DNA of 64,000 nt, from positions 141,045 to 205,044 of the IMG/VR virus record IMGVR_UViG_3300042305_001773. One strand, 5' to 3'. Position numbers and translations under genes: made by a program. Positions within the stretch are counted from its first letter, which is position 1. Each line of letters opens with the position of its first letter. Shown one piece after another: positions 1-62,484 of the stretch. A model generated the notes under the pieces. That model had not been told where the DNA came from and ran no database searches. It saw only the letters and a list, made by a program, of their open reading frames with translations.

Positions 1-21
1 CAAGATAGATATCAATACCCA

Positions 22-252
22 TTACTTGTTTACCTTTTGCCGTTTGAGGGTGTCGAGCCACGCAGATTTGTCTGTTTCTGAAACGGAAATTGCTGAACTG
101 CGGTTAGCCGGTAGTTTGACAATTTTTTTGTTGTCACATTTGCCGGTGGCGGCGGCAGTCATGGCAATCAATTCAGCCGATTTTCTATCTGTCGCATTGA
201 CAACAAATTGCTGGTTTTCGCTGTCGGTAATATCAATGTGGTAATAGGGCAT
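22..252 (-). CDS. hypothetical protein
   Basis: 76-aa ORF with GGAG Shine-Dalgarno (SD) upstream of the ATG; same strand as neighbours. Confidence 0.6.
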   Translation of the reverse strand: MPYYHIDITDSENQQFVVNATDRKSAELIAMTAAATGKCDNKKIVKLPANRSSAISVSETDKSAWLDTLKRQKVNK

Positions 253-271
253 GTGTGCTCCAGTTAAATGA

Positions 272-305
272 GGAGGGCGCCGGGGCCGAAACCCCGACGC
301 CCTCC
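272..305 (-). terminator. GC-rich stem-loop after the 340..669 gene, probable intrinsic terminator
   Basis: Minus strand GGAGGGCGTCGGGGT-TTCG-GCCCCGGCGCCCTCC. Both mismatches are G-U pairs on this strand only. The U-tract (TCATTT) is weak. Confidence 0.6.
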
Positions 306-339
306 ATGGCGTTTAAAGTCGGTACCTACAGCCGGTAGT

Positions 340-669
340 TCACCGGCAGCAGCGGCAGCCGCGGCAGCTGCGGCAAGCGCGGACGGCGCGAACCGGAGCG
401 GCTACAACCTGCACCGGGACTTCTACCACGGCGCGGGTCACGGTGCGAGTCTTCTCGATCGTCCGCCCGAAAAGCCCCTCGCGGCACGAGCTGCGGCACG
501 AGCTTTCCGTGCAGCAGGTGCCGTTGGCGCAAGCCGTGGCGGGGGCAGCGGCGATTACGGCCGCGGCCTCCGGGGCCTGCTTCAGCACGCTCTGCGGCTC
601 ACCGGCATCGCCAGCGAGAACGACGGACGAAACGAACGCAAGAACAACCGCTGCAACACAAGACTTCAT
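340..669 (-). CDS. secreted Cys-rich small protein
   Basis: Signal-peptide-like N-terminus (MKSCVAAVVLAFVSSVVLA), 10 Cys in the mature part, AAGGAG SD. Confidence 0.75.
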   Translation of the reverse strand: MKSCVAAVVLAFVSSVVLAGDAGEPQSVLKQAPEAAAVIAAAPATACANGTCCTESSCRSSCREGLFGRTIEKTRTVTRAVVEVPVQVVAAPVRAVRACRSCRGCRCCR

Positions 670-719
670 GTCAATCTCCTTGAACTACCGAACAAATACT
701 CCGACACGCGTCGGTGTAA

Positions 720-766
720 CCTGCTCAGCTGTACTATCTGTATAGCTGAGCGGGATTTGATTGCAA
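720..766 (-). promoter_or_regulatory. sigma70-like promoter (TTGCAA-N16-TATACA) overlapped by an inverted repeat
   Basis: -35 at 766..761, -10 at 744..739; perfect 8-bp arms at 723-730 and 744-751 with a 13-nt spacer. Confidence 0.55.
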
Positions 767-815
767 CCCCAAAAATCAACATAGATTATGGGGAGTTTTG
801 GCAAAATGCGTAACG

Positions 816-1082
816 CTATTCGCGCACGACGTGCACGTTGTACCAACGCATTTGATTATTCAACCACCTAGCTTCGGCGTCGAGGGCTTCGGCGCGCGAG
901 GTAAACCCTGTGAACAACGGACCACCGACGGGAGCCATATCAGCTATCCATTCGCCGGGTCTGCGTGCATCTGGTTCGACGTGGCTCGCTCGTTTGATGT
1001 CCAACGCGCCGAGCGCTTTCAAATCAATCTCTTCGCCGTAAAGGCATTGAGCCGCGCCGTTAGGTCGCACAAAAATTTGCAT
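816..1082 (-). CDS. small conserved protein with RASHVEP motif, recalled as accompanying DUF1257/DUF2997/AAA clusters
   Basis: Motif KRASHVEPD...W.ADMAPVGGP...R.EAL.AE..WL, recalled from planctomycete gene clusters; not searched. Confidence 0.65.
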   Translation of the reverse strand: MQIFVRPNGAAQCLYGEEIDLKALGALDIKRASHVEPDARRPGEWIADMAPVGGPLFTGFTSRAEALDAEARWLNNQMRWYNVHVVRE

Positions 1083-1089
1083 GGGCGCC

Positions 1090-2091
1090 TCACATCGAGA
1101 TTAAACGGCGGGTTGGAATCAATTCGTTCATATTTACAGGCGGCCGCAGATTAGCCGCAGCGGTGGGCCTGTACAGGTTTTGCTGCCGCTGGTCGGAACG
1201 CGACACGTTAAACGCGTTAAACTGATCTATCCGATCAATAAACGTGTTTGCAAACAGCGCCTGATCGTGGGTGTCTACTCGCGTATAACGACCAACAGTC
1301 GAGTCGTGCTGCGGGCGGAAAATGATATGCCCGCCGGCAACGACCGAGTGGCCGCAAAACGCGATAAGCGCATTGATCTGGTCGGCGTTTGCGATGATTG
1401 CGTAATCAACAACTTTGAGTCGCGACATTTCAATCGTCGGGTCATCCTCGGCGCGCGAATAGATCGACACCTGCATCAGCTTGCTTCCAACTACCTGCGC
1501 TTTTCCGGCAACAGTTACAAAACCGCGCAATGACGAGCTGCTGACCTGTGCTTCGCCGCCGATGTACGACATGCCGTCTAGCGCTACTTGGATTGCTACT
1601 GCGCGGCCGGCAACGCCGCTGCTGCCGCGAATTGTACAGCTGATTACACGCGCGGCGTCACGCACAAACGCGTCATCGTACACGTTAGTAGAACCAGATA
1701 CGGTGCCGCCATATGCGCGAGAGTTGCCCCACAGCTGGCTGTCTTCACCAACGTGCGCACGACCGCTCACAATAGCGTTATTTCGTACGCGCACATTATC
1801 GCGAACGACCGCGTTGCCGCACACGTGAGATCGGTCCATCACGCTGACTCGGCCCTCTACGGTGGCGTTGTGGTACACCTGCGCCCATTTAGTGACTAGT
1901 ACAGAATCAGCCACTTTTGCTGTGTCGGCGACCCAGCCATTGCCGTTTACGTGGCGATGCGCAAACACGCGTCCACGCCCGTCTTTGAAATCGTGTTTAG
2001 ATGCTCGCTTTTTTCGGGGTTTTACTGCGGGCATCTCGACCGTCGGCGCTTCAAGTACGCCGACGGCCCCGTTTTTCTGTTCCTCCATCAC
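1090..2091 (-). CDS. left-handed beta-helix (hexapeptide repeat) protein
   Basis: AHRHVNGNGWVADTA leader followed by hexapeptide periodicity (VCGNAV VRDNVR VRNNAI VSGRAH VGEDSQ LWGNSR). Confidence 0.8.
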   Translation of the reverse strand: MMEEQKNGAVGVLEAPTVEMPAVKPRKKRASKHDFKDGRGRVFAHRHVNGNGWVADTAKVADSVLVTKWAQVYHNATVEGRVSVMDRSHVCGNAVVRDNVRVRNNAIVSGRAHVGEDSQLWGNSRAYGGTVSGSTNVYDDAFVRDAARVISCTIRGSSGVAGRAVAIQVALDGMSYIGGEAQVSSSSLRGFVTVAGKAQVVGSKLMQVSIYSRAEDDPTIEMSRLKVVDYAIIANADQINALIAFCGHSVVAGGHIIFRPQHDSTVGRYTRVDTHDQALFANTFIDRIDQFNAFNVSRSDQRQQNLYRPTAAANLRPPVNMNELIPTRRLISM

Positions 2092-3035
2092 GACTCCATG
2101 GGAAGTACACGACGCCGCGGGGCGTTCGTGATCAGGTTGTCCAGCGCGGTCTTGACTTCGCCCATCTGCTGGGTCAAGTTCTGCCGCAAGTTGGTGTTCT
2201 TGCGCAGATCTTTCACGTCGACACCCGAAACAATGTCAGTAGCGCGCTGAATTAAGTTATCCAGCTGCGCGTTTGAGCGAATATTCATTTGCCGGAAGTT
2301 GTCATAAAACTCTTTAAAGTTTTCGATTGCAGAGTTTTGAAACTTCTTTTTCGTGCCGTCCGGTTCGTCGGTTAGCCGCTCGATCAGGTGCGAGATCATG
2401 TCCTGTAGCTGCTCGGCAAACGCGTTTTCAGCCATGACTACCGCTGTCTCGAACCGATGCTGCACGCGCTGCTGTTCCTGCTGATACAGCTCAGGATTGA
2501 ACGTCATCAGATAGTTCGGCGGATCGACCGGCGGGTACTCCCACCGAAGATCAAACACGCCTTCTAGCGACGGCGGATAGTCGTTGGGGTTGTACAGATC
2601 GCCTAGCTTTTCGCGGGCGGCGACTTTGATCGCTTCGTATTCCAGCTGCAGGTTTGCGGCCGCCACCACAAGCTGCTCTTTGTATTCGCGCATCCGGGTT
2701 TCAAACGCGCCGATGTCAGCCTGCTTGATGAGGCGCACGCCTTCCTGCGGATATGGCAGCGTCATGGAGCGCCAGTACGCCGACGCCTGACTTTTGAGCG
2801 TTGTCAGTACACGATAAGTTGTATTCTTAGTATCAATCAGGCGCTTGGATGCCGTGACCAGATCCGTGGCTGCGTGAAACGTATCCGCGGCTTGCTTGGT
2901 CTGCGCGTCCGAAAGCTTGCGCTGCGTTCCTAGCCACGAGAACGACAGCTTGACCGCACCCATCGTCTGACGCAGCTCGCTTGCAGTCTGCTCGACTGTT
3001 GTGTTTTCTTCGGGCGTTGTGTCGGCTGTAGACAT
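2088..3035 (-). CDS. DUF3150-like alpha-helical protein
   Basis: SW.G..RKL ... SKRLID ... LPY..G..L ... Y.P.DYP ... F...W pattern; lies in the AAA ATPase cluster. Confidence 0.55.
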   Translation of the reverse strand: MSTADTTPEENTTVEQTASELRQTMGAVKLSFSWLGTQRKLSDAQTKQAADTFHAATDLVTASKRLIDTKNTTYRVLTTLKSQASAYWRSMTLPYPQEGVRLIKQADIGAFETRMREYKEQLVVAAANLQLEYEAIKVAAREKLGDLYNPNDYPPSLEGVFDLRWEYPPVDPPNYLMTFNPELYQQEQQRVQHRFETAVVMAENAFAEQLQDMISHLIERLTDEPDGTKKKFQNSAIENFKEFYDNFRQMNIRSNAQLDNLIQRATDIVSGVDVKDLRKNTNLRQNLTQQMGEVKTALDNLITNAPRRRVLPMES

Positions 3036-3635
3036 TCAGTCTCCTTCTTCGTCTGTGTCAAGTTCTTCTTCAATTGTTTGCTCCACCCATTCGTCTATCG
3101 CAAACGCCTTGACGAGATCGCGCGGTAATTTCGCTAGATCTTCAAAGTCGCTTGGGATGTTGAAATCTGTAAGCTTTCCGTCGCGGTACACACCACAGAA
3201 CCCTACGCCCGGCTCGAAGCAGTAGGCTGTGATATCAAAACCCTCAACGGTCCGCAGGTGGTCAAAGAATTGAATTGGGGGCGACCACGCGGAATCAAAC
3301 GTTAGCGTCAGCTGCGTAGCTTTTGCCGGAAGTCGGCGGGGCGACTGATCTGTCTCGCGCCCTACGTCCCACTTTGTCCCCCAATGACCGACCTGCCAGT
3401 CGTACCAGTTTCTCGCTCCGTACAACTCGATGTTTTGCCGTTCTTGCGCCTCTAAAGCCAGTTGTGCGTCAGACCCGGTAGGGCCAGCACAACCGGCGAT
3501 AGTCGCTTTTAATTCGGCTGGGCACGGCAGAAATGTACCCATCAGACAACCACTGTTCCATGCGCGCACCAACTTGTGCAACTGCTCCGGGTCGTTGTGT
3601 TTAAACGTAACTCTGTTGGCGCACCAGTTAGGCAT
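3036..3635 (-). CDS. Api92/YubB-type ferredoxin-like domain protein
   Basis: MPNWCANR, NWYDW...WGTKWDV, FDSAWSPP and EPG.GFCG motifs; start moved to the ATG at 3635. Confidence 0.8.
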   Translation of the reverse strand: MPNWCANRVTFKHNDPEQLHKLVRAWNSGCLMGTFLPCPAELKATIAGCAGPTGSDAQLALEAQERQNIELYGARNWYDWQVGHWGTKWDVGRETDQSPRRLPAKATQLTLTFDSAWSPPIQFFDHLRTVEGFDITAYCFEPGVGFCGVYRDGKLTDFNIPSDFEDLAKLPRDLVKAFAIDEWVEQTIEEELDTDEEGD

Positions 3636-3653
3636 AATGTTTGCCGGCAATCC

Positions 3654-3685
3654 GCAGCTGCGGGGCAGTTACGCCCCGCAGCCGC
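3654..3685 (-). terminator. 13-bp stem-loop between the AAA ATPase and YubB-like genes
   Basis: GCGGCTGCGGGGC-GTAACT-GCCCCGCAGCTGC with one G-U pair on the minus strand; no U-tract, so it may be a processing or stability hairpin. Confidence 0.4.
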
Positions 3686-3699
3686 AGTATTGCTAGCAC

Positions 3700-5184
3700 T
3701 TAGCCTTTCGCCGGCGCCGCGACACGGCGCGGGCGCTGCGTTGTAACCGCCGGCTTACCAACACGCGTGTAAATACCGCGGTTGTCAGCCGACAGGCAGC
3801 GACCTTCAGCCCAGCCGCGCAGACGCTCAATCTGCTCGGCCGACGTCACCGAAATCGGTACCACGTTCTGTGCCGCTTCAACAAGCGGGATATCGAGCAG
3901 CGCCGCGAGCCTGCAGCACGACTTGATCTCGGCGCCGGTCCAGTTGGCGTCATCCGGCTTTTCCTGCGACTCGTCTACGCCGAAGTGCTTCAGGTAGATA
4001 TCCCAGATCGCCGCGCGCTGATCGGCGCCGGGCAGATCCACAAAGAAGATACCGTCGAAGCGCTCGGCGCGGGCAAACGGCGCCGGCAGCTGGCTGGCGT
4101 CGTTGCAGGTGCCGATGAAGAACACATCGGACGTGTGGTCGTTGAGCCACGTCAGCAGCGTGCCGAAAAGACGCGCCGAGACGCCCGAGTCTGTCTGGCC
4201 GGAGCTTCCGACGCCGGCAAGACCCTTCTCGATCTCGTCGACGAACAGAACGCACGGGGCCATGGCGTCGACCTGCTTGAGTGCACGCCGCATATTACCC
4301 TCGGACTCGCCCACGAACTTACCCATGAGCGAACCGAAATCCAGCATTACGGTCGGACGGCCGACCTCGTTGCCAAGTGCTTTGGCAAACTGCGACTTGC
4401 CGCAGCCCGGAGGCGACAGCAGTAGCACGCCCTTGGGGCGCTTTTCTACGTTGGTCTCACCCTGTCGTCGCATAGCGCGCAGGCAGAAACTCTTAAGGTT
4501 TTCGAGACCGCCAAGGTTCTCGAAGTTCGCGTCGCCACGATACAGCGTCATCGTTCCGCTCTTTTCGAGCGTCTGTGCCTTGATGCCCCAGATCGTATCC
4601 GGCGACAGCTTGTTATTGCGCACCAGCGACAGCGCGAACGCGTTCTCGGCCTCCTGCCGCGTCAGGCCGCGTGAGGCGTCGACGACAGCAGCTACGTCCT
4701 GCTCGGCCGGCTTGGCGAACGGAGAGCCGTCCGGGAACAGCTCGTTGCAGACCGTGGTCAGCTGCGGGAGATCCGGCAGCTCGTGATGCACTACCGTGAA
4801 CAGCTTCTCAACCTCGGGCTGCAGCTGCAGCACCGGCGCCACGATAATGATATGTTTGCCCTCGCCCTTGCCCTGCACCACACGATTGGCCAGAGCCTGC
4901 AGCACCTCGGGGTTACCAAGGAAGCGATGAAAATTCTTCAGGACGAGCAGCATCGGCTGCTTGGGCTGCGGCTGGTCGAGAAACCGCAACGCCTGAAGCG
5001 GGCCGGGAGCCGGGGCGGCACCCGAATACAGCTGGCGGTCGATGTCCCACACATCAAAACCCCAGTCCTTTTCTTCAGTTACGCGGCGAATCGACGCAAT
5101 TGCGTCATCGCACTCCTGTGATTCAACCCAGATGCCGGAGAAGCCGGCGCAAACCAGCTCCTTGATTTCTTTTTCGAGCGACAC
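3700..5184 (-). CDS. Ycf46-like AAA+ ATPase (degenerate N-terminal AAA-like domain plus active AAA domain)
   Basis: GGLENLK, Walker A SPPGCGKS, Walker B VLFVDEIEK, R.ERFD.IFFVDLP, WTGAEIK. Confidence 0.9.
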   Translation of the reverse strand: MSLEKEIKELVCAGFSGIWVESQECDDAIASIRRVTEEKDWGFDVWDIDRQLYSGAAPAPGPLQALRFLDQPQPKQPMLLVLKNFHRFLGNPEVLQALANRVVQGKGEGKHIIIVAPVLQLQPEVEKLFTVVHHELPDLPQLTTVCNELFPDGSPFAKPAEQDVAAVVDASRGLTRQEAENAFALSLVRNNKLSPDTIWGIKAQTLEKSGTMTLYRGDANFENLGGLENLKSFCLRAMRRQGETNVEKRPKGVLLLSPPGCGKSQFAKALGNEVGRPTVMLDFGSLMGKFVGESEGNMRRALKQVDAMAPCVLFVDEIEKGLAGVGSSGQTDSGVSARLFGTLLTWLNDHTSDVFFIGTCNDASQLPAPFARAERFDGIFFVDLPGADQRAAIWDIYLKHFGVDESQEKPDDANWTGAEIKSCCRLAALLDIPLVEAAQNVVPISVTSAEQIERLRGWAEGRCLSADNRGIYTRVGKPAVTTQRPRRVAAPAKG

Positions 5185-5223
5185 GTGTGACCTTTGGTTT
5201 GGTTTGGAAAAGACCCGCTATTG

Positions 5224-5415
5224 TCAGTTGCTTTCAGCGATCTGCTCGTCGTTGCTGGCGGCGTAGAACTCGCCCGTCAGCTGCTCGTCCACTTTTGCGC
5301 CCAGCGCTTGCTCAAGCGCGCGGGTTGCGTCCTGACAAGAGCTACCGGTAAAGCCGCTCGTTTCGATCTTGGTGCCGCCCTTGGGGTCGACAATGATTTC
5401 GATGGTCTTCGACAT
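5224..5415 (-). CDS. DUF2997 family protein
   Basis: IEIIVDPKGGTKIETSGFTGSSCQDATRALEQALG matches the DUF2997 pattern; 63 aa, next to DUF1257. Confidence 0.8.
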   Translation of the reverse strand: MSKTIEIIVDPKGGTKIETSGFTGSSCQDATRALEQALGAKVDEQLTGEFYAASNDEQIAESN

Positions 5416-5417
5416 GC

Positions 5418-5783
5418 TTAGAAACCTCCCGTCAGGCTGAGTTTGACCGAACCGTCCGGCAGCATTTCCTCGAACACCGAGTAGCCGCCCTTCTGCGCCT
5501 CATAGATCGCCTTTTCCACCGCGTACGCCTGCAGGAAATGATCCAGCTCTTCCTGCTTGCCCCACGCGCCGTTGTAGTTGTCGTACGCCGCGGCACCCGT
5601 CTCCGTGTTAAACACGGCCGGATACTGCCAGCCGGGAAGCTTTACAGCGAGGCCGTCCGCCGACTGCCCGGCAAACAGCACATGGTGCCCGGCTTTCGGG
5701 GCCTCAAGCCCGAGACGCTTGCAGGCCGCTTCAATCGCGGCGGCGTCCTTTACTTCCGTCTTGATCTGAACAATGTGAGACAT
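5418..5783 (-). CDS. DUF1257 (Ycf35-like) protein
   Basis: MSH...IKTEVKD...I.AAC..LG start, YA.E......GY and EE...DGSVKL end. Confidence 0.8.
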   Translation of the reverse strand: MSHIVQIKTEVKDAAAIEAACKRLGLEAPKAGHHVLFAGQSADGLAVKLPGWQYPAVFNTETGAAAYDNYNGAWGKQEELDHFLQAYAVEKAIYEAQKGGYSVFEEMLPDGSVKLSLTGGF

Positions 5784-5807
5784 GTTTAGCCTCTTCTGTC
5801 CTTTGCT

Positions 5808-6107
5808 TTAAGGTAGTTCTTGAAGTGCACACACAATTGTGTTTTCAAATTGTTCCGGCGAGATGTAATCATTGCCGGCAAAATATTCCAATACAGCAAC
5901 CGCGGTTTTGCGGTCATAAACCTGTTTAAATTCGCGAGGGCCGCGCGGCGTATCCAGACGATACTCAGTTATGTCGTGAAGTGTCACAACTTCTGGTATC
6001 GCCAGCACGTCTTTGTATTTCGTGCGTATCGCGTCTAACTCATCAAGCGCGGTCAGGATTCGCTCGCGATCGTTAGCATAAGAACTATCGTTCGCGTACG
6101 GTGTCAT
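5808..6107 (-). CDS. hypothetical protein
   Basis: ATG at 6107 overlaps the upstream stop (ATGA). Confidence 0.6.
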   Translation of the reverse strand: MTPYANDSSYANDRERILTALDELDAIRTKYKDVLAIPEVVTLHDITEYRLDTPRGPREFKQVYDRKTAVAVLEYFAGNDYISPEQFENTIVCALQELP

Positions 6108-6412
6108 CTGTAGGCTACGACCTCGGCGCGGGTTTCCACCCAAACGTGCGCGCCACAAGAAAGCGGCGAGTCGGGAGAATAGACAACCCGCGACTCGCCG
6201 CGCACGTCAACGGTTTTGGCCGCGTATGTTTTATTACGCCACTTAATAGTCAGCGGCGGTACGCGCAGGTTTTGATTTTTGTTGCTGCGAATAATGTGCT
6301 GGTTGACGTGTATGCGTTTAATTGTCCCAGCCGGCATTGTCATTTCATCAGCGTCCCCCGGGAAACGCAGCGGAATACGGGGCTCTAGCAGGCAGACGTC
6401 TTCTGTCGCCAT
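6104..6412 (-). CDS. conserved hypothetical phage protein
   Basis: IHVNQH.IR.N ... VYSPD.PLSCGA.VW.ET motif, common in large phages. Confidence 0.7.
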   Translation of the reverse strand: MATEDVCLLEPRIPLRFPGDADEMTMPAGTIKRIHVNQHIIRSNKNQNLRVPPLTIKWRNKTYAAKTVDVRGESRVVYSPDSPLSCGAHVWVETRAEVVAYR

Positions 6413-6484
6413 TGTGACGTTATTTATTCCGCGTCGGCTTGGTCGTCCGTGACCGTCGCCGAACGCGGTTTAAATAGACAGGCG

Positions 6485-7366
6485 TCAGGTCGCCATCATC
6501 GAGCGGAGCTGCTTGTGCGCCGAAAGAATCTCGGCGGCCGTCGTGTAACAGCCGTCGCACGTCTCCAGAAACGCAGACGCGGCGTTCAGCTGCTCCATCG
6601 GCAGCGTCGTCGTGCCGCTCGGCGCTTTCGCGACCGGGCGCTTCGGCGCAGCCTTGGCGGGTTCTGCCGCCTTGGTTGCGTGCTTGCGTCGCGCGGCGTC
6701 ACGGCTGCGCTCCTCGCCGGCGGCCACAGCCACCGCACCGCGCTTCGCCGGGGCAACGCCCGCCTTCTTCAACAGCTGGCTCACCTGAGCCGGGCTGACC
6801 GTTACACGCTTCTTGGCGAGCGCGGCCACGATGTCAACACCGCGGAGCGAATCGCCAGACTCCTGCCGACGCTCGATCTCCTCGCGGATGTGATCGGCGC
6901 CGCTCTTCTTCTCGGCCATGTCCTTCACCTTCCCTTTTGGGGTCTTGGTCGCCTTGGGCGCCTCGACCGGGTCATCGTCTTCGTCGGTCTCCACAGTGGA
7001 GTCGACAGCTTCGTCAGAAACCTCGTCGCCTTCTTCTGGCGCGTACTCGGTCTCGTCGTCGTCTTCGTCGATCTCTTCGTCGGGCAGCTTGGCAGCCGTC
7101 TCACGAACGTCTGTGCTGCCTTCGTCTTCGTAGTCGGCGTCTGCTTCCGCGTACGCCGCTTCGTCATCGACCGTGTCTTCTTCAAGCTCGGCGTCAACAT
7201 CTGCGTCAACGTCTTCGTCGTCGTAATCTTCTGGTGTCGCGAACCGCATCCGTGTGGTTCCTTTCTCCTTCTTCTTTTCTTTCTCTGCAGGCGCCTTGCT
7301 GGTTGCGCCCGGTAGTGGCTTCCCCCACAAATTTGCCGGACTCACAAACTCTTCAGCTTTGGCCAT
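6485..7366 (-). CDS. acidic N-terminal region fused to a planctomycete-type small DNA-binding (nucleoid-like) protein
   Basis: D/E-rich region at about aa 45-135; C-terminal KKS.ADHIRE...GVDIVAALAKK.VTVSPAQVS and a Lys/Ala/Pro-rich linker; GGAGAGGA SD. Confidence 0.65.
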   Translation of the reverse strand: MAKAEEFVSPANLWGKPLPGATSKAPAEKEKKKEKGTTRMRFATPEDYDDEDVDADVDAELEEDTVDDEAAYAEADADYEDEGSTDVRETAAKLPDEEIDEDDDETEYAPEEGDEVSDEAVDSTVETDEDDDPVEAPKATKTPKGKVKDMAEKKSGADHIREEIERRQESGDSLRGVDIVAALAKKRVTVSPAQVSQLLKKAGVAPAKRGAVAVAAGEERSRDAARRKHATKAAEPAKAAPKRPVAKAPSGTTTLPMEQLNAASAFLETCDGCYTTAAEILSAHKQLRSMMAT

Positions 7367-7390
7367 AGCGTCCTCTCCTAAAGCGCCGCC

Positions 7391-7408
7391 GGCCGAAACG
7401 TTTCGGCC
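7391..7408. promoter_or_regulatory. perfect 18-bp palindrome upstream of the 6485..7366 gene
   Basis: GGCCGAAACGTTTCGGCC; possible operator or 5' UTR hairpin. Confidence 0.4.
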
Positions 7409-7474
7409 TCGTCGTGCGGCTAAATGAAAAATACACCGCCGGAAACAAAAAGCAACTACCGTAGAAAACAGCGG

Positions 7475-7837
7475 TTATTTGCTGCTTCGGTAGTTGTCCG
7501 GCACGTTGCCGTCTTTGGTGCGAAGTACGCCGGCGTTTAGTTCTGGCCACTTTTCTAGCGAATGAATAGCGCCGATGACATTCCACGCCGCGTGCCCCAG
7601 ATGGTCTTCGCTGCGGTCGCCGTTCAAAAAATTATAGATGTGCGCGATCGCGTGATTCAGCAGGTCAGAGACGGGCATGCCGTTTTCCCAGTTGTATGGG
7701 CCAAATTTTTCAGCCCCTTCGTGGTAGGTCTGCGCGAGCGCCCGCAGACCGATCGGCGAAATTAGATCGTAACGCACGGCGTCACAATCAGCGCTGCGTA
7801 CCGCGCCAGTGTCGTACTCGTGACGTTCGTTACTCAT
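7475..7837 (-). CDS. dATP/dGTP diphosphohydrolase domain protein (DUF5664-like)
   Basis: TGAVRS...RYDLI.P..L..LA..Y..GAEK....NW..G ... H...H ... EDHL.HAAWN. Confidence 0.85.
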   Translation of the reverse strand: MSNERHEYDTGAVRSADCDAVRYDLISPIGLRALAQTYHEGAEKFGPYNWENGMPVSDLLNHAIAHIYNFLNGDRSEDHLGHAAWNVIGAIHSLEKWPELNAGVLRTKDGNVPDNYRSSK

Positions 7838-8145
7838 TAGAGATAACCTTCTTGTCGGAAAGCAAAATAGAGCCGCGGGTTGTCGTTGAACGCGACTGTG
7901 CCTCGAACACCGTCGACTTTTCTAATTACGTGTACGTAAGGCGGTTCAAAGTGCGACACCTCAAATGTGTCCAGTAATTGCTCGCTGCTCCAAACATGTT
8001 CGCCGTACTGCTCTTGCAATACTGTACGAATTTCGTCTAGCCCGCGGCGGTCAAGTTGTTCTTTGATAACATTACGCAACATCACGTGCCCGATGTCGAG
8101 CGGTATCTGCGTTGCCAGTTCTTTAACTTTGGGTGGTGTCGGCAT
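7837..8145 (-). CDS. conserved hypothetical phage protein
   Basis: VW.....L..FEV..F..PYV.V.RK.DG..G...F...PR.YF.F pattern; start moved to the ATG at 8145 (uncertain). Confidence 0.65.
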   Translation of the reverse strand: MPTPPKVKELATQIPLDIGHVMLRNVIKEQLDRRGLDEIRTVLQEQYGEHVWSSEQLLDTFEVSHFEPPYVHVIRKVDGVRGTVAFNDNPRLYFAFRQEGYL

Positions 8146-8521
8146 TTGATTGTGCAAGCTTGTCCAGTTCTTCTTTCTGTTGTTTGATTTGCTCTGCGAC
8201 ATGCGCCGCATACTGGTCAAGCATCCTAAGCTGGCCGACAAGATCTTTGTGCACGTCAACGCTAAACAACGAAAGCCGCCGCATCAGCATGAGTAGGCTT
8301 GCGGTAAAAGGCGGTTCTTTGCTGCGTAAACTCAGTAGGCCGGGCGGGGCGTTTTCGGGTTGCGAAGTCCACAGCGGGACAAGCGCAAGTCCGTGTAGTT
8401 CTGGAACAGCGGCCATTACTTCGTTACAAAACTCTTCGCCGCGCCGCATAAACTCGACGTCAAACGGGAGGCGGTCAGATTGAATTTCAGGTTGCTGATC
8501 AGGTTGCTGCGGCGTATCCAT
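8123..8521 (-). CDS. hypothetical protein with C-terminal coiled coil
   Basis: 132-aa ORF, GGA SD. Confidence 0.65.
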   Translation of the reverse strand: MDTPQQPDQQPEIQSDRLPFDVEFMRRGEEFCNEVMAAVPELHGLALVPLWTSQPENAPPGLLSLRSKEPPFTASLLMLMRRLSLFSVDVHKDLVGQLRMLDQYAAHVAEQIKQQKEELDKLAQSNADTTQS

Positions 8522-8534
8522 TAAACATCCTTTG

Positions 8535-8882
8535 TTATTGTGCGTAGCGTGATTCTTTTGGAAGCACGCCGTCGATTACGTTACCCAGTCGTGTAGCGGC
8601 AAGGCTGTAGATCACCACCCTAACGGCAGTCTCGACCATACCGCCAATTCCTGTTCCTGCCAAGAGCAGCAGAAACAAGTACAGCGGCGCGTGATATGAC
8701 TTGCAAAACGGGCAATTGATCAGCTCTAGCAGCTTGCCTTTTGCCGTGTTGTATGGTGTCACATCTTGAAGCGCCTGCGCGTAGGCTCGCGCTGTTTCAA
8801 ACAGAGAACCTTTGTGCCACACCTCGATGATTGCGCCAGCAGCGAGTGTGACAGCCAAAAAGTCTAGAGCACTGATTGTCAT
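8535..8882 (-). CDS. DUF1360-like membrane protein
   Basis: Hydrophobic segments around LINCPFCKSYH; ATG at 8882 overlaps the upstream stop. Confidence 0.7.
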   Translation of the reverse strand: MTISALDFLAVTLAAGAIIEVWHKGSLFETARAYAQALQDVTPYNTAKGKLLELINCPFCKSYHAPLYLFLLLLAGTGIGGMVETAVRVVIYSLAATRLGNVIDGVLPKESRYAQ

Positions 8883-9061
8883 CGCCGTCTTCGTTTGTGT
8901 GTTGTTGATGTGGTGCCGCGTACAAAGCACGCGCCACTATAGATCGCCGCGCCCGCCACCACGAGCCCGGCAACGCCAATTTGCGGTATTGCGCAGATTC
9001 CGGCAAGAAGCATAAGCGCAGCGTAACCGGAAAACGTGGCGTGAGGATCTGGTTGTGACAT
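8879..9061 (-). CDS. small membrane protein with basic C-terminus
   Basis: Two hydrophobic stretches then HKRRRR; TAATG overlap with the upstream gene. Confidence 0.55.
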   Translation of the reverse strand: MSQPDPHATFSGYAALMLLAGICAIPQIGVAGLVVAGAAIYSGACFVRGTTSTTHKRRRR

Positions 9062-9285
9062 TAGGGTGCCTGACTGTCGCCGTGCGGCCACACCTGTGTT
9101 CGAGTTGTGTCCGGCGCGGCTGGGTTAAATTGATATTGCGGTAGCGGCAACGGCGCCTCAAGTTTAAGATGGTTTACTGCGTTATCAGGGAAATAGAGTT
9201 GCGGGCCGGGGCCGCGACGCGTGCCCTCGACGTAGTGCTGTTTTCGTTCCTGATACAATTTTGCGGAGCGTCCGACGTTTGCCAT
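9061..9285 (-). CDS. hypothetical protein
   Basis: GGAGG SD 4 nt before the ATG. Confidence 0.65.
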   Translation of the reverse strand: MANVGRSAKLYQERKQHYVEGTRRGPGPQLYFPDNAVNHLKLEAPLPLPQYQFNPAAPDTTRTQVWPHGDSQAP

Positions 9286-9302
9286 ATAACCTCCAGAAAG
9301 TA

Positions 9303-9337
9303 CGTGGCCGGGTCACCGTTTAGTATACCCGGCCGCG
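9303..9337 (-). promoter_or_regulatory. TATACT -10 element framed by an inverted repeat
   Basis: Arms GGCCGGGT (9306-9313) and ACCCGGCC (9327-9334), 13-nt spacer, -10 at 9327..9322, about 30 nt upstream of an SD-bearing gene. Confidence 0.5.
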
Positions 9338-9506
9338 CAGCTATCACTTGCGAGTCGTTTCTTTGGCGGCGGCCGCTGCAACCTGACACATGTAACCGAG
9401 TACATTTGCCAGTCCAGCAAGACCGTATATGAAAACATGCCCAGTGTATTTGAGGCTGTCTTCAACCCATTGAAATTCAGACTCGCTACCGTTGTTATTG
9501 TGGTTC

Positions 9507-11423
9507 ATGGATAAACCTGATCAAACAGTTACTGAAGCAGTTGACATGCCTTCCGTAGGCGTGCAATCACTTCTACAAGAATTAATCTCGATCGACGTGA
9601 CGGATGTGCATTCTGTTCACGCGCGTGCCGCTGTTTTGCAGCAGCTCGCGGGTCGGCATGCTTTCCCGTCGCTCGAACCTATTTTGCCTTTGGTTCTGAA
9701 CCTTAATGGACGCCCGTACAGCATTCAGAATCATATGCCTTTTTCCCCACTTTTCCGGCTACTGACGCCGAAAAATCAAGTGTGGTGCACGGGGCGTCAG
9801 GTATCAAAATCGACCAGCCTAGCAGCGCACGGAGTTGTAGTTGCCAACTCTATCCCGTTCTTCAAAACGTTATTCATCACACCGTTGTACGAACAGATAC
9901 GCCGGTTCTCGAATAACTATGTGCGTCCGTTTATCGATCAGTCTCCTGTGAAGTCGCAATGGAGCGGCACGACGACCGAGAATTCAGTTCTGCAAAGATC
10001 TTTTAAAAACAACTCAATGATGTTGTTTAGCTTTGCGCTTTTAGATTCGGATCGTGTGCGTGGTGTTTCTGCAGACCGCGTGTGCATCGACGAAGTTCAG
10101 GACATGGATCCTGATCACGTGCCGATCATTCAAGAAACGATGTCTTACTCCAAATGGGCGACGAGTTATTACACAGGAACGCCGAAGACGCTAGATAACT
10201 TAATTTACGGATTGTATAAACGATCATCACAGGCCGAATGGTTTATACCTTGTCATTCATGCAAGCACTGGAGCATCCCTTCGCTTGAGTATGACTTAGA
10301 TAAAATGATCGGCCCATACAGCATTCATATCAGCGAGAACTATCCGGGCACCGTCTGCGCTAAATGTCAGAAACCGATCAGCCCAAGGCATGGTCGGTGG
10401 GTGCATAGATATCCCGAACGCCGCTGGCAATTTGCCGGGTATCACGTACCGCAGATGATACTACCGCTTCATTTCTCCGACCCTGAAAAGTGGTCAACTC
10501 TATTGTTGAAGAGGGAAGGCTTTGGGAATATGACCCAAGCGCAGTTCTACAACGAGGTAATGGGAGAAAGCGTTGATACCGGTCAGAAGCTCATCAGCGA
10601 AACTGATTTGAAGGCTGCGTGCGTGCTAGACTGGGAAAACAAGAAAGAACCAGACCCTAAGTGCTTTGCAAATCTCTCGAACTACAAACATCGCATCCTT
10701 GCGGTCGACTGGGGCGGTGGCGGAGAAGCAGGTATTAGTTTCACCGTGCTTACTGTGCTGGGGTTCCGCCCAGATGGGACCATCGACACGCTGTGGGCCA
10801 AGCGCCTGCTTATTGGCGGCGATCATTTGGCCGAAGCGGTTGAATGTATGCGCTGGTCTAACTTGTTTAATTGCGATTTTGTCGCTCACGATTACACGGG
10901 CGCCGGCACGGTCCGCGAAACGGTCATGGTGCAGGCTGGGTTTAATCTAGAGCGAGTCTTGGCGATGCGACTTGTTCGTTCCGCGTCGCAAGATTTGATG
11001 GTGTTCAAACCGCCGACAGAGATCAATCATCGAGCGCACTATAGCCTCGACAAAACGCGGTCGTTGCTGTACACGTGTCAGGCGATCAAGCTGAAGCAAG
11101 TCCGCTTCTTCCAGTATGACTGGGCGTCGCAGGACTCGCCGGGCTTGGTGTCGGACTTTCTTGCGCTGGTAGAAAGTAAAGCCGAGTCTAGACTAGGCGG
11201 CGATATTTATACCATTACAAGGAACACGTTGTTGACTGACGACTTTGCGCAAGCTGTTAACCTAGGCTGCGCCGCTCTTTGGCACGTGAATAACGCGTGG
11301 CCTAATTTCGCGGAGATAGCTGGCGTAGCCCGGTTAAGCGAGCGTGTTGTTAAGGCAGAGACGCCGATGGATGACGACTGGGCGGATGATTCCATCGGGC
11401 GAAACTACTTTGGCGGGTATTAA
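9507..11423 (+). CDS. terL: terminase large subunit, GpA-like
   Basis: Walker A GRQVSKST, Walker B RVCIDEVQD, coupling motif TGTP, CxxC...CxxC Zn lid, RuvC-like AVDWGGG; start uncertain (9492, 9507 or 9546). Confidence 0.9.
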   Translation: MDKPDQTVTEAVDMPSVGVQSLLQELISIDVTDVHSVHARAAVLQQLAGRHAFPSLEPILPLVLNLNGRPYSIQNHMPFSPLFRLLTPKNQVWCTGRQVSKSTSLAAHGVVVANSIPFFKTLFITPLYEQIRRFSNNYVRPFIDQSPVKSQWSGTTTENSVLQRSFKNNSMMLFSFALLDSDRVRGVSADRVCIDEVQDMDPDHVPIIQETMSYSKWATSYYTGTPKTLDNLIYGLYKRSSQAEWFIPCHSCKHWSIPSLEYDLDKMIGPYSIHISENYPGTVCAKCQKPISPRHGRWVHRYPERRWQFAGYHVPQMILPLHFSDPEKWSTLLLKREGFGNMTQAQFYNEVMGESVDTGQKLISETDLKAACVLDWENKKEPDPKCFANLSNYKHRILAVDWGGGGEAGISFTVLTVLGFRPDGTIDTLWAKRLLIGGDHLAEAVECMRWSNLFNCDFVAHDYTGAGTVRETVMVQAGFNLERVLAMRLVRSASQDLMVFKPPTEINHRAHYSLDKTRSLLYTCQAIKLKQVRFFQYDWASQDSPGLVSDFLALVESKAESRLGGDIYTITRNTLLTDDFAQAVNLGCAALWHVNNAWPNFAEIAGVARLSERVVKAETPMDDDWADDSIGRNYFGGY

Positions 11424-11746
11424 AAAATCCGCCAGCAGTAGTCCTCGATAAATTTTTTCATCGCCGCGTAATCTCTAATCTTGGCGGTTTCAATAACGTC
11501 AACGACGGCACAAGCCGCGGTATACAGCGCGGTCGCCGCTTCCGTACAATCCATTGAGGAGTCATACAACTCCCAATTAGCGCCAGAGCGCGGCACGGCT
11601 GGTTCCTTGCCTTCAAACGCGTCGGCGACGATTCGCTGAAATACGCCATCTGGTTCGGTATCCATCGCGCCAAACGAGCGATACTTTTCTTGAACTTTTT
11701 CGAATCTACGAATCGCTTCTTTGAGCGTCGTCACGGCAAGTGTCAT
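11420..11746 (-). CDS. hypothetical protein
   Basis: ORF converging on terL; start uncertain. Confidence 0.6.
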   Translation of the reverse strand: MTLAVTTLKEAIRRFEKVQEKYRSFGAMDTEPDGVFQRIVADAFEGKEPAVPRSGANWELYDSSMDCTEAATALYTAACAVVDVIETAKIRDYAAMKKFIEDYCWRIF

Positions 11747-12188
11747 CGGATTTACCGCCGGCGTTGACAATCTCCATACCCTTTTCAGTTATCGAGAAAT
11801 TGAAATCGTTTTTTTCGCAGTCATACTCAGCGTCTAGCAAACCACGCTGTACGCCGACACGCATAATGTTCGATATGACACGAGCACCGAGCGCGCGAAA
11901 TAACCGAAGCATCTTTTCTTTGTACTCTTCAAACGAGTTTGCGCCGATGCCGTACGCGCCGTCTGTTTGAATATCTGACAGGTCGCGTACAATTTGCTCG
12001 ACCTCCCATATCTCCAAGAATTGACGCTGGTAGTCCAGATCGCATTCGGCTTCAGTCGGCTTTTCGTTTTGCATCTTTGCGATAAAGCCAGCAAACATCA
12101 TAAGCACGTGATCGCGCAAATCTTCAATCGATCCGCAAATGCGGCGAGACGGCTGCTCGTCGTTTTCGTCTTCGTAGTCTTCGAACAT
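11706..12188 (-). CDS. hypothetical protein
   Basis: GAGG SD before the ATG at 12188. Confidence 0.65.
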   Translation of the reverse strand: MFEDYEDENDEQPSRRICGSIEDLRDHVLMMFAGFIAKMQNEKPTEAECDLDYQRQFLEIWEVEQIVRDLSDIQTDGAYGIGANSFEEYKEKMLRLFRALGARVISNIMRVGVQRGLLDAEYDCEKNDFNFSITEKGMEIVNAGGKSDDTCRDDAQRSDS

Positions 12189-13804: not shown

Positions 13805-13839
13805 GCCGCGTCCTCCGAGACACAGCATGAAGTATACAA

Positions 13840-13912
13840 AGCCGGCGGTCGGATTCGAACCGACGACAGGCAGTTTACAAAACTGCTACTCTACCAACTG
13901 AGTTACGCCGGC
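13840..13912 (-). tRNA. trnT: tRNA-Thr (anticodon UGU), CCA not encoded
   Basis: Full cloverleaf: acceptor GCCGGCG/CGCCGGC, D arm ACTC-AGTTGGTA-GAGT, anticodon arm GCAGT-TTTGTAA-ACTGC, T arm GTCGG-TTCGAAT-CCGAC. Confidence 0.95.
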
Positions 13913-42521: not shown

Positions 42522-43343
42522 TTAAAAATTGCCTTGCGTATATTGTTTGTCGAGCATTGCCTGAATCTTGGCGGCGCGCTGACTTACAGCGCCGGGCGTG
42601 ATGTTTAATCGTCGCGCAATTTCTTGTGTGCTGGTTTTTCTTCGTCCGTTGCGGCCAAGTGTCATATCCGCAATTAACTTGTCGACCGGACCAAGATCTT
42701 CATAGACAAAGTTAAACCACGCGTCGGCGGATCGATTGCTGTTTGGAATCGTGCTCGCGACATCACCGCCGTAGCTTTCTTCGTCGGTGACTTCGCGCGT
42801 TGTCATGCCCTCTGATACCGGCTGGTTAAACGCGCGGATTTTCTGAATACGGCGTTTTGACAGCCCGGTGTGATCCGCCAGCTCGTCGTCCGTAGGGTCA
42901 CGACCTAGCTGGTCGTACAGCTCGGATTCGCTCTCCGTTAGCCGTCCGTAATCGAGGCCGACCTGCTCAGGAATCGAGATGATGTTTTGCGCCTGCGCAG
43001 ACACGCGGCGCAAACTCTGCAACTGCGACAGCAAGTGTGTGCGCACGTTACCGCGCTGCGGGTCGTATGTATCCAACGCTTTGAGCGCCATAAGCCGCGC
43101 CTTGGAGCGGGTTGTCGGGCTGGCGTTTTGGCCGGCGTAACTCATCACGGCCGTGTCGATAACCGGCTGAAGCGTCCCCAGCAGCGCCGTATTCGTTTCC
43201 GGCGTTTTAGTGCGCTGCCATTGCGCATAAGCGTTGTCAAAGTCGGTGCTGACGCCAGTCGGCATTCGGGCCGAGAACGGCGCGGGCACGTCGCCTAAAA
43301 TAGACGGCATGCCGGCTGGCGTACTGGTTTTGTTATCAGCCAT
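42522..43343 (-). CDS. RNA polymerase sigma-70 family factor (regions 2, 3, 4)
   Basis: AL.TYDPQRG (region 2), LGRDPTDDELA.HTGLS (region 3), T.EIARRLNITPGAVSQR (region 4 HTH); start moved to the ATG at 43343. Confidence 0.85.
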   Translation of the reverse strand: MADNKTSTPAGMPSILGDVPAPFSARMPTGVSTDFDNAYAQWQRTKTPETNTALLGTLQPVIDTAVMSYAGQNASPTTRSKARLMALKALDTYDPQRGNVRTHLLSQLQSLRRVSAQAQNIISIPEQVGLDYGRLTESESELYDQLGRDPTDDELADHTGLSKRRIQKIRAFNQPVSEGMTTREVTDEESYGGDVASTIPNSNRSADAWFNFVYEDLGPVDKLIADMTLGRNGRRKTSTQEIARRLNITPGAVSQRAAKIQAMLDKQYTQGNF

Positions 43344-43345
43344 GA

Positions 43346-59213: not shown

Positions 59214-59220
59214 AGTATAC
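59214..59220 (-). promoter_or_regulatory. TATACT -10-like site upstream of the sheath gene
   Basis: GTATACT about 56 nt before the ATG; CACGGAGG SD. Confidence 0.45.
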
Positions 59221-62454: not shown

Positions 62455-62484
62455 GTAAGCCTCCGTGTTACACCGTAAGTATAC

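What the first reader, a model, noticed from the sequence alone, without database searches (positions are those of the whole stretch)
9303..9337. Second promoter with identical inverted-repeat geometry (site 2 of 2)
Seen: plus strand CG-T-GGCCGGGT-[CACCGTTTAGTAT]-ACCCGGCC-G-CG. The minus-strand -10 TATACT begins on the last base of the upstream arm, as at 720-754. Both loops are 13 nt and end in GTAT, and both have a T.G at the ninth stem position followed by two more pairs. No good -35 is present here. The site lies about 30 nt before a GGAGG-led gene.
Basis: partly seen in the sequence, partly recalled or inferred. Interest (0 to 1): 0.6.

Follow-up and report, generated by a model that had tools for sequence, protein, structure and literature searches.

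The report
Promoter-like box inside conserved RNA hairpin
Between two small genes of an uncultivated 205-kb phage sits a hairpin whose stem keeps changing sequence while staying paired and whose tip always carries the promoter-like word GTATACT; it is most likely a combined transcript-end hairpin and promoter, a kind of element already known from T4-like phages.

Summary
The inverted repeat at 9303-9337 is exactly as described. It is a real, selected element. In about 47 distinct relatives (terminase 75-99% identical) the arms differ completely yet stay complementary (87% paired against 30-44% in slid controls; 11 pairs with compensatory changes). The tip keeps GTATACT, then 3-5 free bases, then RGTR, which pairs back onto UACU using G.U pairs. 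Those pairs form only in RNA of the gene-sense (minus) strand, so the repeat acts as a sense-strand RNA hairpin, not a DNA operator. The TATACT word is still best read as a -10 box. Such hexamers are about five-fold depleted genome-wide. GTATACT also recurs, conserved, upstream of the tail-sheath gene and of a 330-aa gene, where distant relatives replace it with other TAnnnT hexamers. Relatives that lack the downstream 74-aa gene keep the hairpin but lose the TATACT. A structure model finds only one copy per genome. Site 1 (720-754) has a similar layout (TATACA tip, covarying arms) but exists only in the closest relatives. Best reading: a composite attenuator hairpin plus embedded -35-less promoter, functionally like the PeSL cassettes of T4-type phages. 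No transcript data could be obtained.

The parts
9327..9337 (-). 5' arm of the hairpin in gene sense (CGCGGCCGGGT). Its sequence is free in relatives but stays complementary to the 3' arm.
9322..9328 (-). GTATACT: -10-like hexamer TATACT (9327-9322) preceded by G. Invariant in all orthologs that have the 74-aa gene.
   Evidence: recurrence at other genes; genome-wide depletion
9314..9326 (-). Tip of the hairpin: bulged A, inner helix UACU (9325-9322) with GGUG (9317-9314) including two U.G pairs, and tetraloop AAAC (9321-9318). The predicted transcription start at 9314-9316 lies here.
   Evidence: the start position is inferred from -10 spacing, not measured
9303..9313 (-). 3' arm of the hairpin (ACCCGGCCACG)
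9295..9302 (-). T-rich tail (5 T in 8) directly after the stem. It is terminator-like here and in about a quarter of relatives, and absent in others.
9283..9294 (-). Shine-Dalgarno GGAGG (9294-9290) and ATG (9285-9283) of the 74-aa gene
9061..9285 (-). Conserved 74-aa gene of unknown function (N-terminal basic helix, rest Pro-rich and probably disordered). The TATACT tip is present only where this gene is present.
9344..9508 (-). Conserved 54-aa membrane-protein gene (ELQWLED-type motif plus TM segment) that ends 6 nt before the hairpin. The hairpin follows this gene in all relatives.
8879..9061 (-). 60-aa membrane-protein gene whose ATG overlaps the stop of the 74-aa gene (TAATG). It is the next gene of the same leftward unit.
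9507..11423 (+). Large terminase, divergent. Its ATG overlaps the ATG of the 54-aa gene.
720..754 (-). Site 1: hairpin with a similar layout (arms, invariant GCTATACA at the 5' side of the tip, AGTR on the 3' side), upstream of a 109-aa secreted-protein gene. Found only in the closest relatives.
59214..59220 (-). GTATACT 56 nt before the tail-sheath ATG, conserved in relatives and with no enclosing hairpin
62478..62484 (-). GTATACT directly after a canonical terminator and 23 nt before the ATG of the 330-aa gene; conserved in relatives

Best explanation
A composite intercistronic element with two layers. RNA layer: transcripts coming from the 54-aa membrane-protein gene fold into a 15-20-bp sense-strand hairpin. 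It consists of an outer stem of free sequence, a bulged A, an inner UACU/RGUR helix and a tetraloop, and it ends 0-10 nt before the ribosome site of the next gene. It most likely attenuates or terminates that transcription, or caps the RNA end; here it is followed by a 5-of-8 T tail. DNA layer: the 5' half of the tip is GTATACT, a sigma-70-family -10 box without a -35. It starts new transcripts at about 9314-9316 for the 74-aa gene and the leftward genes behind it, probably with help from a phage factor such as the sigma-like protein at 42522-43376. The -10 box fixes the 5' half of the tip, so only the 3' half can vary, and only between G and A, both of which pair with U. Shown: the hairpin, its covariation, its strand bias, the invariance and recurrence of the box, and its link to the gene. 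Inferred: promoter activity, start site, and termination.
For: Covariation: 87.3% of cells paired against 30-44% for slid partners, 11 of 17 pairs with changes on both sides, and 0 of 500 shuffles reach the score. RNAalifold finds the same stem unaided.
Strand: sense-strand RNA folds better in 41 of 49 orthologs, -21.9 against -17.3 kcal/mol. G.U outnumbers A.C 18 to 6 in the outer stems. The inner pairs are U.G or U-A only.
Box as -10: TATACT occurs 13 times against about 62 expected and TATAAT 9 against about 50, while GTATAC is not depleted. GTATACT is conserved before the sheath gene and the 330-aa gene in G0, G3 and G4. In more distant genomes it is replaced there by TACAAT, TACACT or TATATC, which keeps the TAnnnT form.
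Link to the gene: 61 loci (46 distinct) have both box and gene. Nine loci (L053/L055, L054, L059-L063, L066; one search lists a tenth, L079, which is a spurious match in a truncated locus) lack the gene and lack the box but keep a hairpin, some with the same arms. There are no real discordant cases; the one listed is a regex artefact for L012, which has both.
Tail: at least 5 T in 8 in 13 of 48 orthologs, including the window.
Precedent: PeSL cassettes of T4-type phages combine a promoter with a stem-loop that may overlap the -10, with G-T pairs, and both activities were shown experimentally (PMC2839356).
Against: There is no -35, no extended -10 and no T-rich upstream region at this site, so an unaided sigma-70 promoter would be weak. 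The T-rich tail is absent (2 T or fewer) in 17 of 48 orthologs, so classical intrinsic termination cannot be the conserved function of the stem. A terminator that encloses the promoter does not shield it from read-through polymerases. Perfect arm complementarity could be helped by template-switch repair of quasi-palindromes rather than by selection alone. The invariance of GTATACT could equally reflect recognition of the RNA by a protein.
Confidence: 0.5

Rival explanations
1. RNA operator. The hairpin tip (bulged A plus UACU/RGUR helix) is bound by a phage protein that controls translation of the adjacent 74-aa gene or modifies the transcribing polymerase, in the manner of nut/boxB with N. 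The binder could be the 74-aa protein itself. TATACT is then conserved as RNA, not as a promoter.
For: The hairpin is a sense-strand RNA structure. It ends 0-10 nt before the ribosome site in all relatives. The tip is present only with the 74-aa gene. There is one copy per genome. The 74-aa protein is predicted as one N-terminal basic helix (residues 6-19) and otherwise unstructured, pLDDT 61. Site 1 has a similar tip.
Against: The tetraloop is free to vary, and the 3' strand of the inner helix switches between G and A, which changes helix geometry. Only the strand that would be the non-template -10 is invariant. The same word recurs upstream of two other genes without any hairpin and drifts there within the TAnnnT family. 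The protein has few arginines and no known RNA-binding family.
Confidence: 0.2
2. A plain intercistronic RNA hairpin (terminator, RNase III site or stabiliser) with no promoter. The TATACT word is a frozen accident of the tip.
For: Strong sense-strand hairpin. T-rich tail in a subset. The hairpin persists after the 54-aa gene even where the 74-aa gene is missing.
Against: Tips of simple terminators are not held invariant over this divergence while the stems turn over completely. The word is otherwise avoided in the genome. The tip decays exactly where the downstream gene is lost.
Confidence: 0.15
3. Structure-dependent DNA promoter. The repeat extrudes as a cruciform or hairpin in supercoiled DNA and presents the -10 box single-stranded to a polymerase or sigma, as phage N4 early promoters do for the virion RNA polymerase.
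For: The box sits in the 13-nt spacer of a perfect inverted repeat. No -35 is present. Very few copies per genome.
Against: The DNA fold is weak (-11 to -13 kcal/mol, z -2.3 to -3.4). A 13-nt spacer with 8-bp arms disfavours extrusion. G.T pairs are tolerated and biased to one strand, which fits RNA rather than DNA. The other GTATACT sites have no repeat.
Confidence: 0.05
4. Packaging or replication signal next to the terminase gene (pac/cos-like site or nicking hairpin).
For: Single copy, next to the large terminase, with a conserved tip in a hairpin.
Against: Relatives with the same terminase lack the tip when the 74-aa gene is absent. The element always keeps a fixed spacing to that gene's ribosome site. 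The strand bias points to RNA.
Confidence: 0.03

Closest known systems
PeSL (promoter-early stem-loop) cassettes of T4-type phages (Arbiol et al. 2010, PMC2839356; Comeau et al. 2014, PMC4122927)
   Same: An intergenic composite of a stem-loop and a sigma-70-type promoter between an upstream stop codon and a downstream Shine-Dalgarno and ATG. The stem-loop may overlap the -10 box and contains G-T pairs. It precedes small accessory genes that come and go between relatives. The stem-loop is read as an attenuator of upstream transcription.
   Different: There is no -35 and no AT-rich upstream block. There are one or two copies per genome rather than dozens of repeated copies. The -10 sits at the tip of a long 15-20-bp hairpin. 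The element is orthologous and covarying across a whole phage group rather than a dispersed repeat, with no sign of recombination between copies. The phage lineage is unrelated.
Phage N4 early promoters for the virion RNA polymerase (own knowledge: 5-7-bp stem, 3-nt loop, DNA hairpin extruded with supercoiling and SSB)
   Same: A promoter tied to an inverted repeat, few copies per genome, no -35.
   Different: In N4 the hairpin is in DNA, is small, and has conserved stem and loop bases. Here the arms are free in sequence, the spacer is 13 nt, and the pairing rules fit RNA.
Lambda nut sites (boxB hairpin) with N protein (own knowledge)
   Same: A small RNA hairpin just upstream of a gene for a small, largely disordered protein with a basic N-terminal helix, possibly with a second site elsewhere in the same transcription direction.
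   Different: In boxB the loop is the conserved recognised part; here the loop is free. No boxA-like element was seen, and no similarity between the 74-aa protein and N was found.
Single-element promoters of phage sigma factors, e.g. phiEco32 gp36 (AATGTA centred at -11.5; PMC12276001)
   Same: A conserved -10-region word without a -35, used for a handful of later genes, in a phage that encodes its own sigma-like protein.
   Different: The word is different. Recognition by the sigma-like protein at 42522-43376 is untested.
Rho-independent terminators
   Same: A GC-rich sense-strand hairpin after a stop codon, followed by a T-rich tail in the window and in a quarter of relatives.
   Different: The tip sequence is invariant, there is a bulge and a long stem, and the T tail is missing in a third of relatives.

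Membership tests
PeSL cassette | Sigma-70-like -35 and -10 boxes 17 bp apart | tested here: not met
   A -10-like TATACT is present, but there is no -35 match at 16-18 bp and the position is not conserved in relatives.
PeSL cassette | Stem-loop adjacent to or overlapping the promoter, between an upstream stop and a downstream SD/ATG | tested here: met
   The hairpin encloses the -10. The stop codon lies 6 nt upstream and the SD 8 nt downstream.
PeSL cassette | Many dispersed, sequence-similar copies in plastic genome regions | tested here: not met
   The covariance model finds one copy per genome in five genomes. Only sites 1 and 2 have this layout.
PeSL cassette | Association with accessory genes that are inserted or deleted between relatives | tested here: met
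   The 74-aa gene and the TATACT tip are absent together in 9 loci. Site 1 and its 109-aa gene are absent together in G3 and G4.
PeSL cassette | Demonstrated promoter and terminator activity | not testable with these tools
   Needs reporter assays or transcript mapping.
Sigma-70-type promoter | -10 hexamer with T-12, A-11 and T-7, conserved at a fixed distance from the gene | tested here: met
   TATACT is invariant in 46 distinct orthologs, with G of GTATACT 37-51 nt before the ATG.
Sigma-70-type promoter | A primary transcript 5' end about 7 nt downstream of the hexamer | not testable with these tools
   No RNA data available.
Rho-independent terminator | Stable GC-rich RNA hairpin in the sense of the upstream gene | tested here: met
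   -25.2 kcal/mol, z -4.3; sense strand favoured.
Rho-independent terminator | U-tract directly after the stem | tested here: inconclusive
   5 of 8 in the window. At least 5 of 8 in 13 of 48 orthologs and 2 or fewer in 17 of 48.
N4-type DNA hairpin promoter | Short DNA hairpin with conserved stem and loop bases, stable as DNA | tested here: not met
   The arms are not conserved in sequence. The DNA fold is weak. G.T pairs are biased to one strand.
Known RNA families (Rfam 15) | Match to a curated covariance model | tested here: not met
   No match at E up to 1 in window 1-12000.

The most novel reading that the evidence does not exclude
The element is a dual-use switch in which the same seven bases are a -10 box in DNA and one strand of a protein-recognised helix in RNA. 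The small, largely disordered 74-aa protein with a basic N-terminal helix binds the hairpin in front of its own gene, and the similar hairpin at 720-754. It would control read-through or translation, making this an N/nut-like system unrelated in sequence to the lambdoid one, in a group of uncultivated 200-kb phages.
Probability: 0.12. Interest if true: 0.75.

Novelty: new variant of a known kind. Interest (0 to 1): 0.5.

Why it matters
The element is a clean natural example of one short sequence under two constraints at once: a DNA promoter word and an RNA helix strand. This is visible directly in the substitution pattern across dozens of relatives. It gives a testable handle on transcription-unit boundaries and promoter grammar in a large group of uncultivated roughly 200-kb phages for which nothing is known. 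If confirmed, it would show that the composite promoter/stem-loop design described for T4-type phages arose independently elsewhere. It also flags a conserved 74-aa protein whose presence is tied to the element.

Tried and rejected
- Similarity to cultured phages: no DNA match. The terminase is at most 31% identical to any cultured phage.
- Rfam: nothing.
- Generic promoter and terminator scan: it does not see this site on the minus strand, because of the bulge and the loop limit.
- Site 1 as a member of the site 2 family: rejected at model level, although the layout is similar.
- Similarity of the tip to TATACT-N-ACGGTG before the 330-aa gene: rejected as chance, because it is not conserved in G3 and G4.
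- Plus-strand promoter for the terminase from the palindromic AGTATACT: rejected as a conserved feature. The base that would give T at -7 on the plus strand is a covarying stem position, A in 12 and G in 14 of 26 sequences.
- Packaging signal: rejected.
- DNA cruciform: disfavoured.
- Universal intrinsic terminator: not supported.
- Function of the 74-aa protein: Pfam and PHROGs gave nothing. The word search gave only hypothetical metagenomic proteins. The AlphaFold model was low-confidence, so no fold search was run.

Full report
What is there. The window is the last 64 kb of a 205,044-bp virus record from a metagenome. It has no DNA similarity to any cultured phage, and its large terminase is at most 31% identical to known ones. 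It has 8-bp perfect arms (9306-9313 and 9327-9334), which extend to 11 positions with a plus-strand T.G at the ninth. The spacer is 13 nt and ends in GTAT. On the minus strand, TATACT begins on the last base of the upstream arm. Perfect 8-bp inverted repeats are common in this genome (148 register hits), so the repeat alone proves nothing.

Context. The site lies between two real minus-strand genes:
- Upstream is a 54-aa membrane protein (9344-9508). Its ELQWLED-type motif and hydrophobic segment are conserved in all relatives.
- Downstream is a 74-aa protein (9061-9285) with a conserved N-terminus and a GGAGG ribosome site.
- The stop of the 74-aa gene overlaps the start of a 60-aa membrane-protein gene.
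- The large terminase (9507-11423, plus strand) is divergent, and its ATG overlaps that of the 54-aa gene.

Relatives. A terminase-based search returned 80 related loci, 75-99% identical in protein. Almost all carry a hairpin at the same place. The arms have entirely different sequences but remain complementary, and the tip is nearly invariant.
- On a gap-free alignment of 26 orthologs, 87.3% of cells pair, against 30-44% when partners are slid. Eleven of 17 pairs show changes on both sides, and no shuffle reaches the observed score.
- RNAalifold on all 49 distinct sequences finds the same structure unaided.
- The exact 15-mer of the tip occurs 45 times in the viral collection. Every occurrence flanked by arms is followed by the 74-aa gene. 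The dozen chance occurrences elsewhere have no comparable arms.

RNA or DNA, and which strand. Three observations point to RNA of the gene-sense (minus) strand:
- After GTATACT come 3-5 free bases and then RGTR, which pairs back onto UACU. The two positions opposite U are G or A and nothing else (U.G 29, U-A 19; U.G 28, U-A 17).
- In the outer stems, G.U-type cells outnumber A.C-type cells 18 to 6 in gene sense.
- Folded as RNA, the gene-sense strand is more stable than the opposite strand in 41 of 49 orthologs. The means are -21.9 and -17.3 kcal/mol, with Wilcoxon p about 2e-7; the sequences are related, so this p is generous.

As DNA the fold is weak. The repeat is therefore a hairpin in the sense-strand RNA: 15-20 bp with a bulged A and a tetraloop, ending 0-10 nt before the ribosome site. 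An RNA begun at the predicted start inside the spacer could not form it. The hairpin must therefore act on transcripts arriving from the 54-aa gene.

Why the box still looks like a promoter. The 5' strand of the tip never covaries; only its partner changes. That asymmetry is expected if the 5' strand is also read as the non-template -10 strand. Three further observations fit this:
- Hexamers of the -10 type are strongly depleted in this genome and in two relatives (TATAAT 9 against about 50 expected, TATACT 13 against about 62). GTATAC, which shares the TATA core, is not depleted.
- Of the few GTATACT words, most sit in intergenic DNA shortly upstream of minus-strand genes. Two of these positions are conserved in G0, G3 and G4: one before the tail-sheath gene and one before a 330-aa gene just after a canonical terminator.
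- In more distant genomes the word at those two positions becomes TACAAT, TACACT or TATATC, so it drifts while largely keeping the TAnnnT form of a -10 box.

A natural experiment. Nine loci lack the 74-aa gene. All of them still have a strong hairpin right after the 54-aa gene, and some share arm sequences with gene-bearing relatives. None of them has TATACT at the tip; one has TATAAC. All 61 loci scored as having the gene also have the box, as do the gene-bearing loci that its upstream-gene filter missed (L011-L015, L012, L076). There are no real discordant cases. The stem therefore belongs with the upstream gene or the operon, and the tip belongs with the downstream gene. The T-rich tail that would make the hairpin a classical terminator is present in the window (5 of 8) and in 13 of 48 orthologs. 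It is missing in 17 of 48, so termination is plausible here but is not the universal role of the stem.

Copy number and site 1. A covariance model of the element finds exactly one copy in each of five near-complete genomes and does not match site 1. Site 1 (720-754) exists only in the closest relatives, together with the 109-aa secreted-protein gene behind it. Both are missing in G3 and G4. Its layout is nevertheless alike. The arms covary modestly (90.5% paired, three double changes), GCTATACA is invariant on the 5' side of the tip, and AGTR lies on the 3' side with A/G switching. Its hexamer lacks the T at -7, and the window's own copy folds better in the opposite sense. I therefore treat it as a possible weaker relative, not a proven second member.

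Mechanism proposed. The element is a composite. A sense-strand RNA hairpin attenuates, terminates or caps transcripts from the upstream gene. Embedded at its tip is a -35-less -10 box that starts transcripts for the 74-aa gene and the genes behind it, probably with a phage factor such as the sigma-like protein at 42522-43376 (Sigma70_r3). The closest described design is the PeSL cassette of T4-type phages. There a sigma-70 promoter and a stem-loop, often overlapping the -10 and containing G-T pairs, sit between a stop codon and the next ribosome site and travel with accessory genes. Both activities were shown experimentally for PeSLs (PMC2839356; PMC4122927). This element fails the PeSL definition on the -35, the AT-rich block and the multi-copy criterion, so it works like a PeSL without being one.

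Rivals. The main rival is an RNA operator bound by a protein, possibly the 74-aa protein itself. That protein is modelled as one basic N-terminal helix followed by unstructured chain (pLDDT 61) and has only hypothetical relatives. This rival fits the position next to the ribosome site and the gene linkage. It fits less well the free loop, the G/A switching in the helix, and the hairpin-free recurrence of the word. A plain terminator, a DNA cruciform promoter of the N4 type and a packaging signal are each less likely, for the reasons given in their entries.

Limits. Gene calls outside the studied loci come from a simple script. The expected hexamer counts use base composition only. Many relatives are close to each other, so counts of sequences overstate independent events.

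Noticed in passing
G000:C1 47598, 51627, 53859, 54241, 55194, 62971 (minus strand; outside the window): A repeated promoter-like family: CTAAATAAAC, then a 12-16-nt spacer that often holds a short covarying hairpin (ACCCG/CGGGT, ACGCG/CGCGT), then (C/T)ATAT(C/T)TAGT. Two copies follow a terminator plus TTTTTTTAGCTATC. It looks more like a classical multi-copy PeSL set than the site studied.
   Followed up: partly
window 13831-13912: tRNA-Thr (tgt) at 13840-13912 on the minus strand is followed at once by GTATACT (13837-13831) and an acetyltransferase-like gene.
   Followed up: partly
window 9506-9509: The start codons of the terminase (ATG 9507) and of the divergent 54-aa gene (ATG 9508 on the minus strand) overlap, and relatives show the same pattern. 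Each gene's promoter must therefore lie inside the other gene.
   Followed up: partly
L056 and L075, 2351-5608: The terminase reading frame is about 1085 aa instead of about 640, suggesting an insertion (an intein or an added domain) in these relatives.
   Followed up: no
whole genome G000, also G003 and G004: Hexamers of the -10 type are about five-fold rarer than base composition predicts (TATAAT, TATACT, TATAGT, TAGAAT), while GTATAC and TAAAAT are not.
   Followed up: partly
window 670-815: The 146-nt spacer that holds site 1 carries three hairpins in a row. The third (701-714) is followed by a T-rich tail and covaries in relatives, so a terminator-like hairpin lies between site 1 and the 109-aa gene.
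   Followed up: partly
window 9059-9063: The stop of the 74-aa gene and the start of the next 60-aa membrane-protein gene overlap as TAATG, suggesting coupled translation. In relatives without the 74-aa gene, a roughly 150-nt non-coding stretch takes its place.
   Followed up: partly
G000:C1 about 69000-70100 (outside the window): A run of GGTATACAAGG-type repeats lies inside a gene and looks like collagen-like Gly-X-Y coding repeats. It accounts for several GTATAC counts.
   Followed up: no
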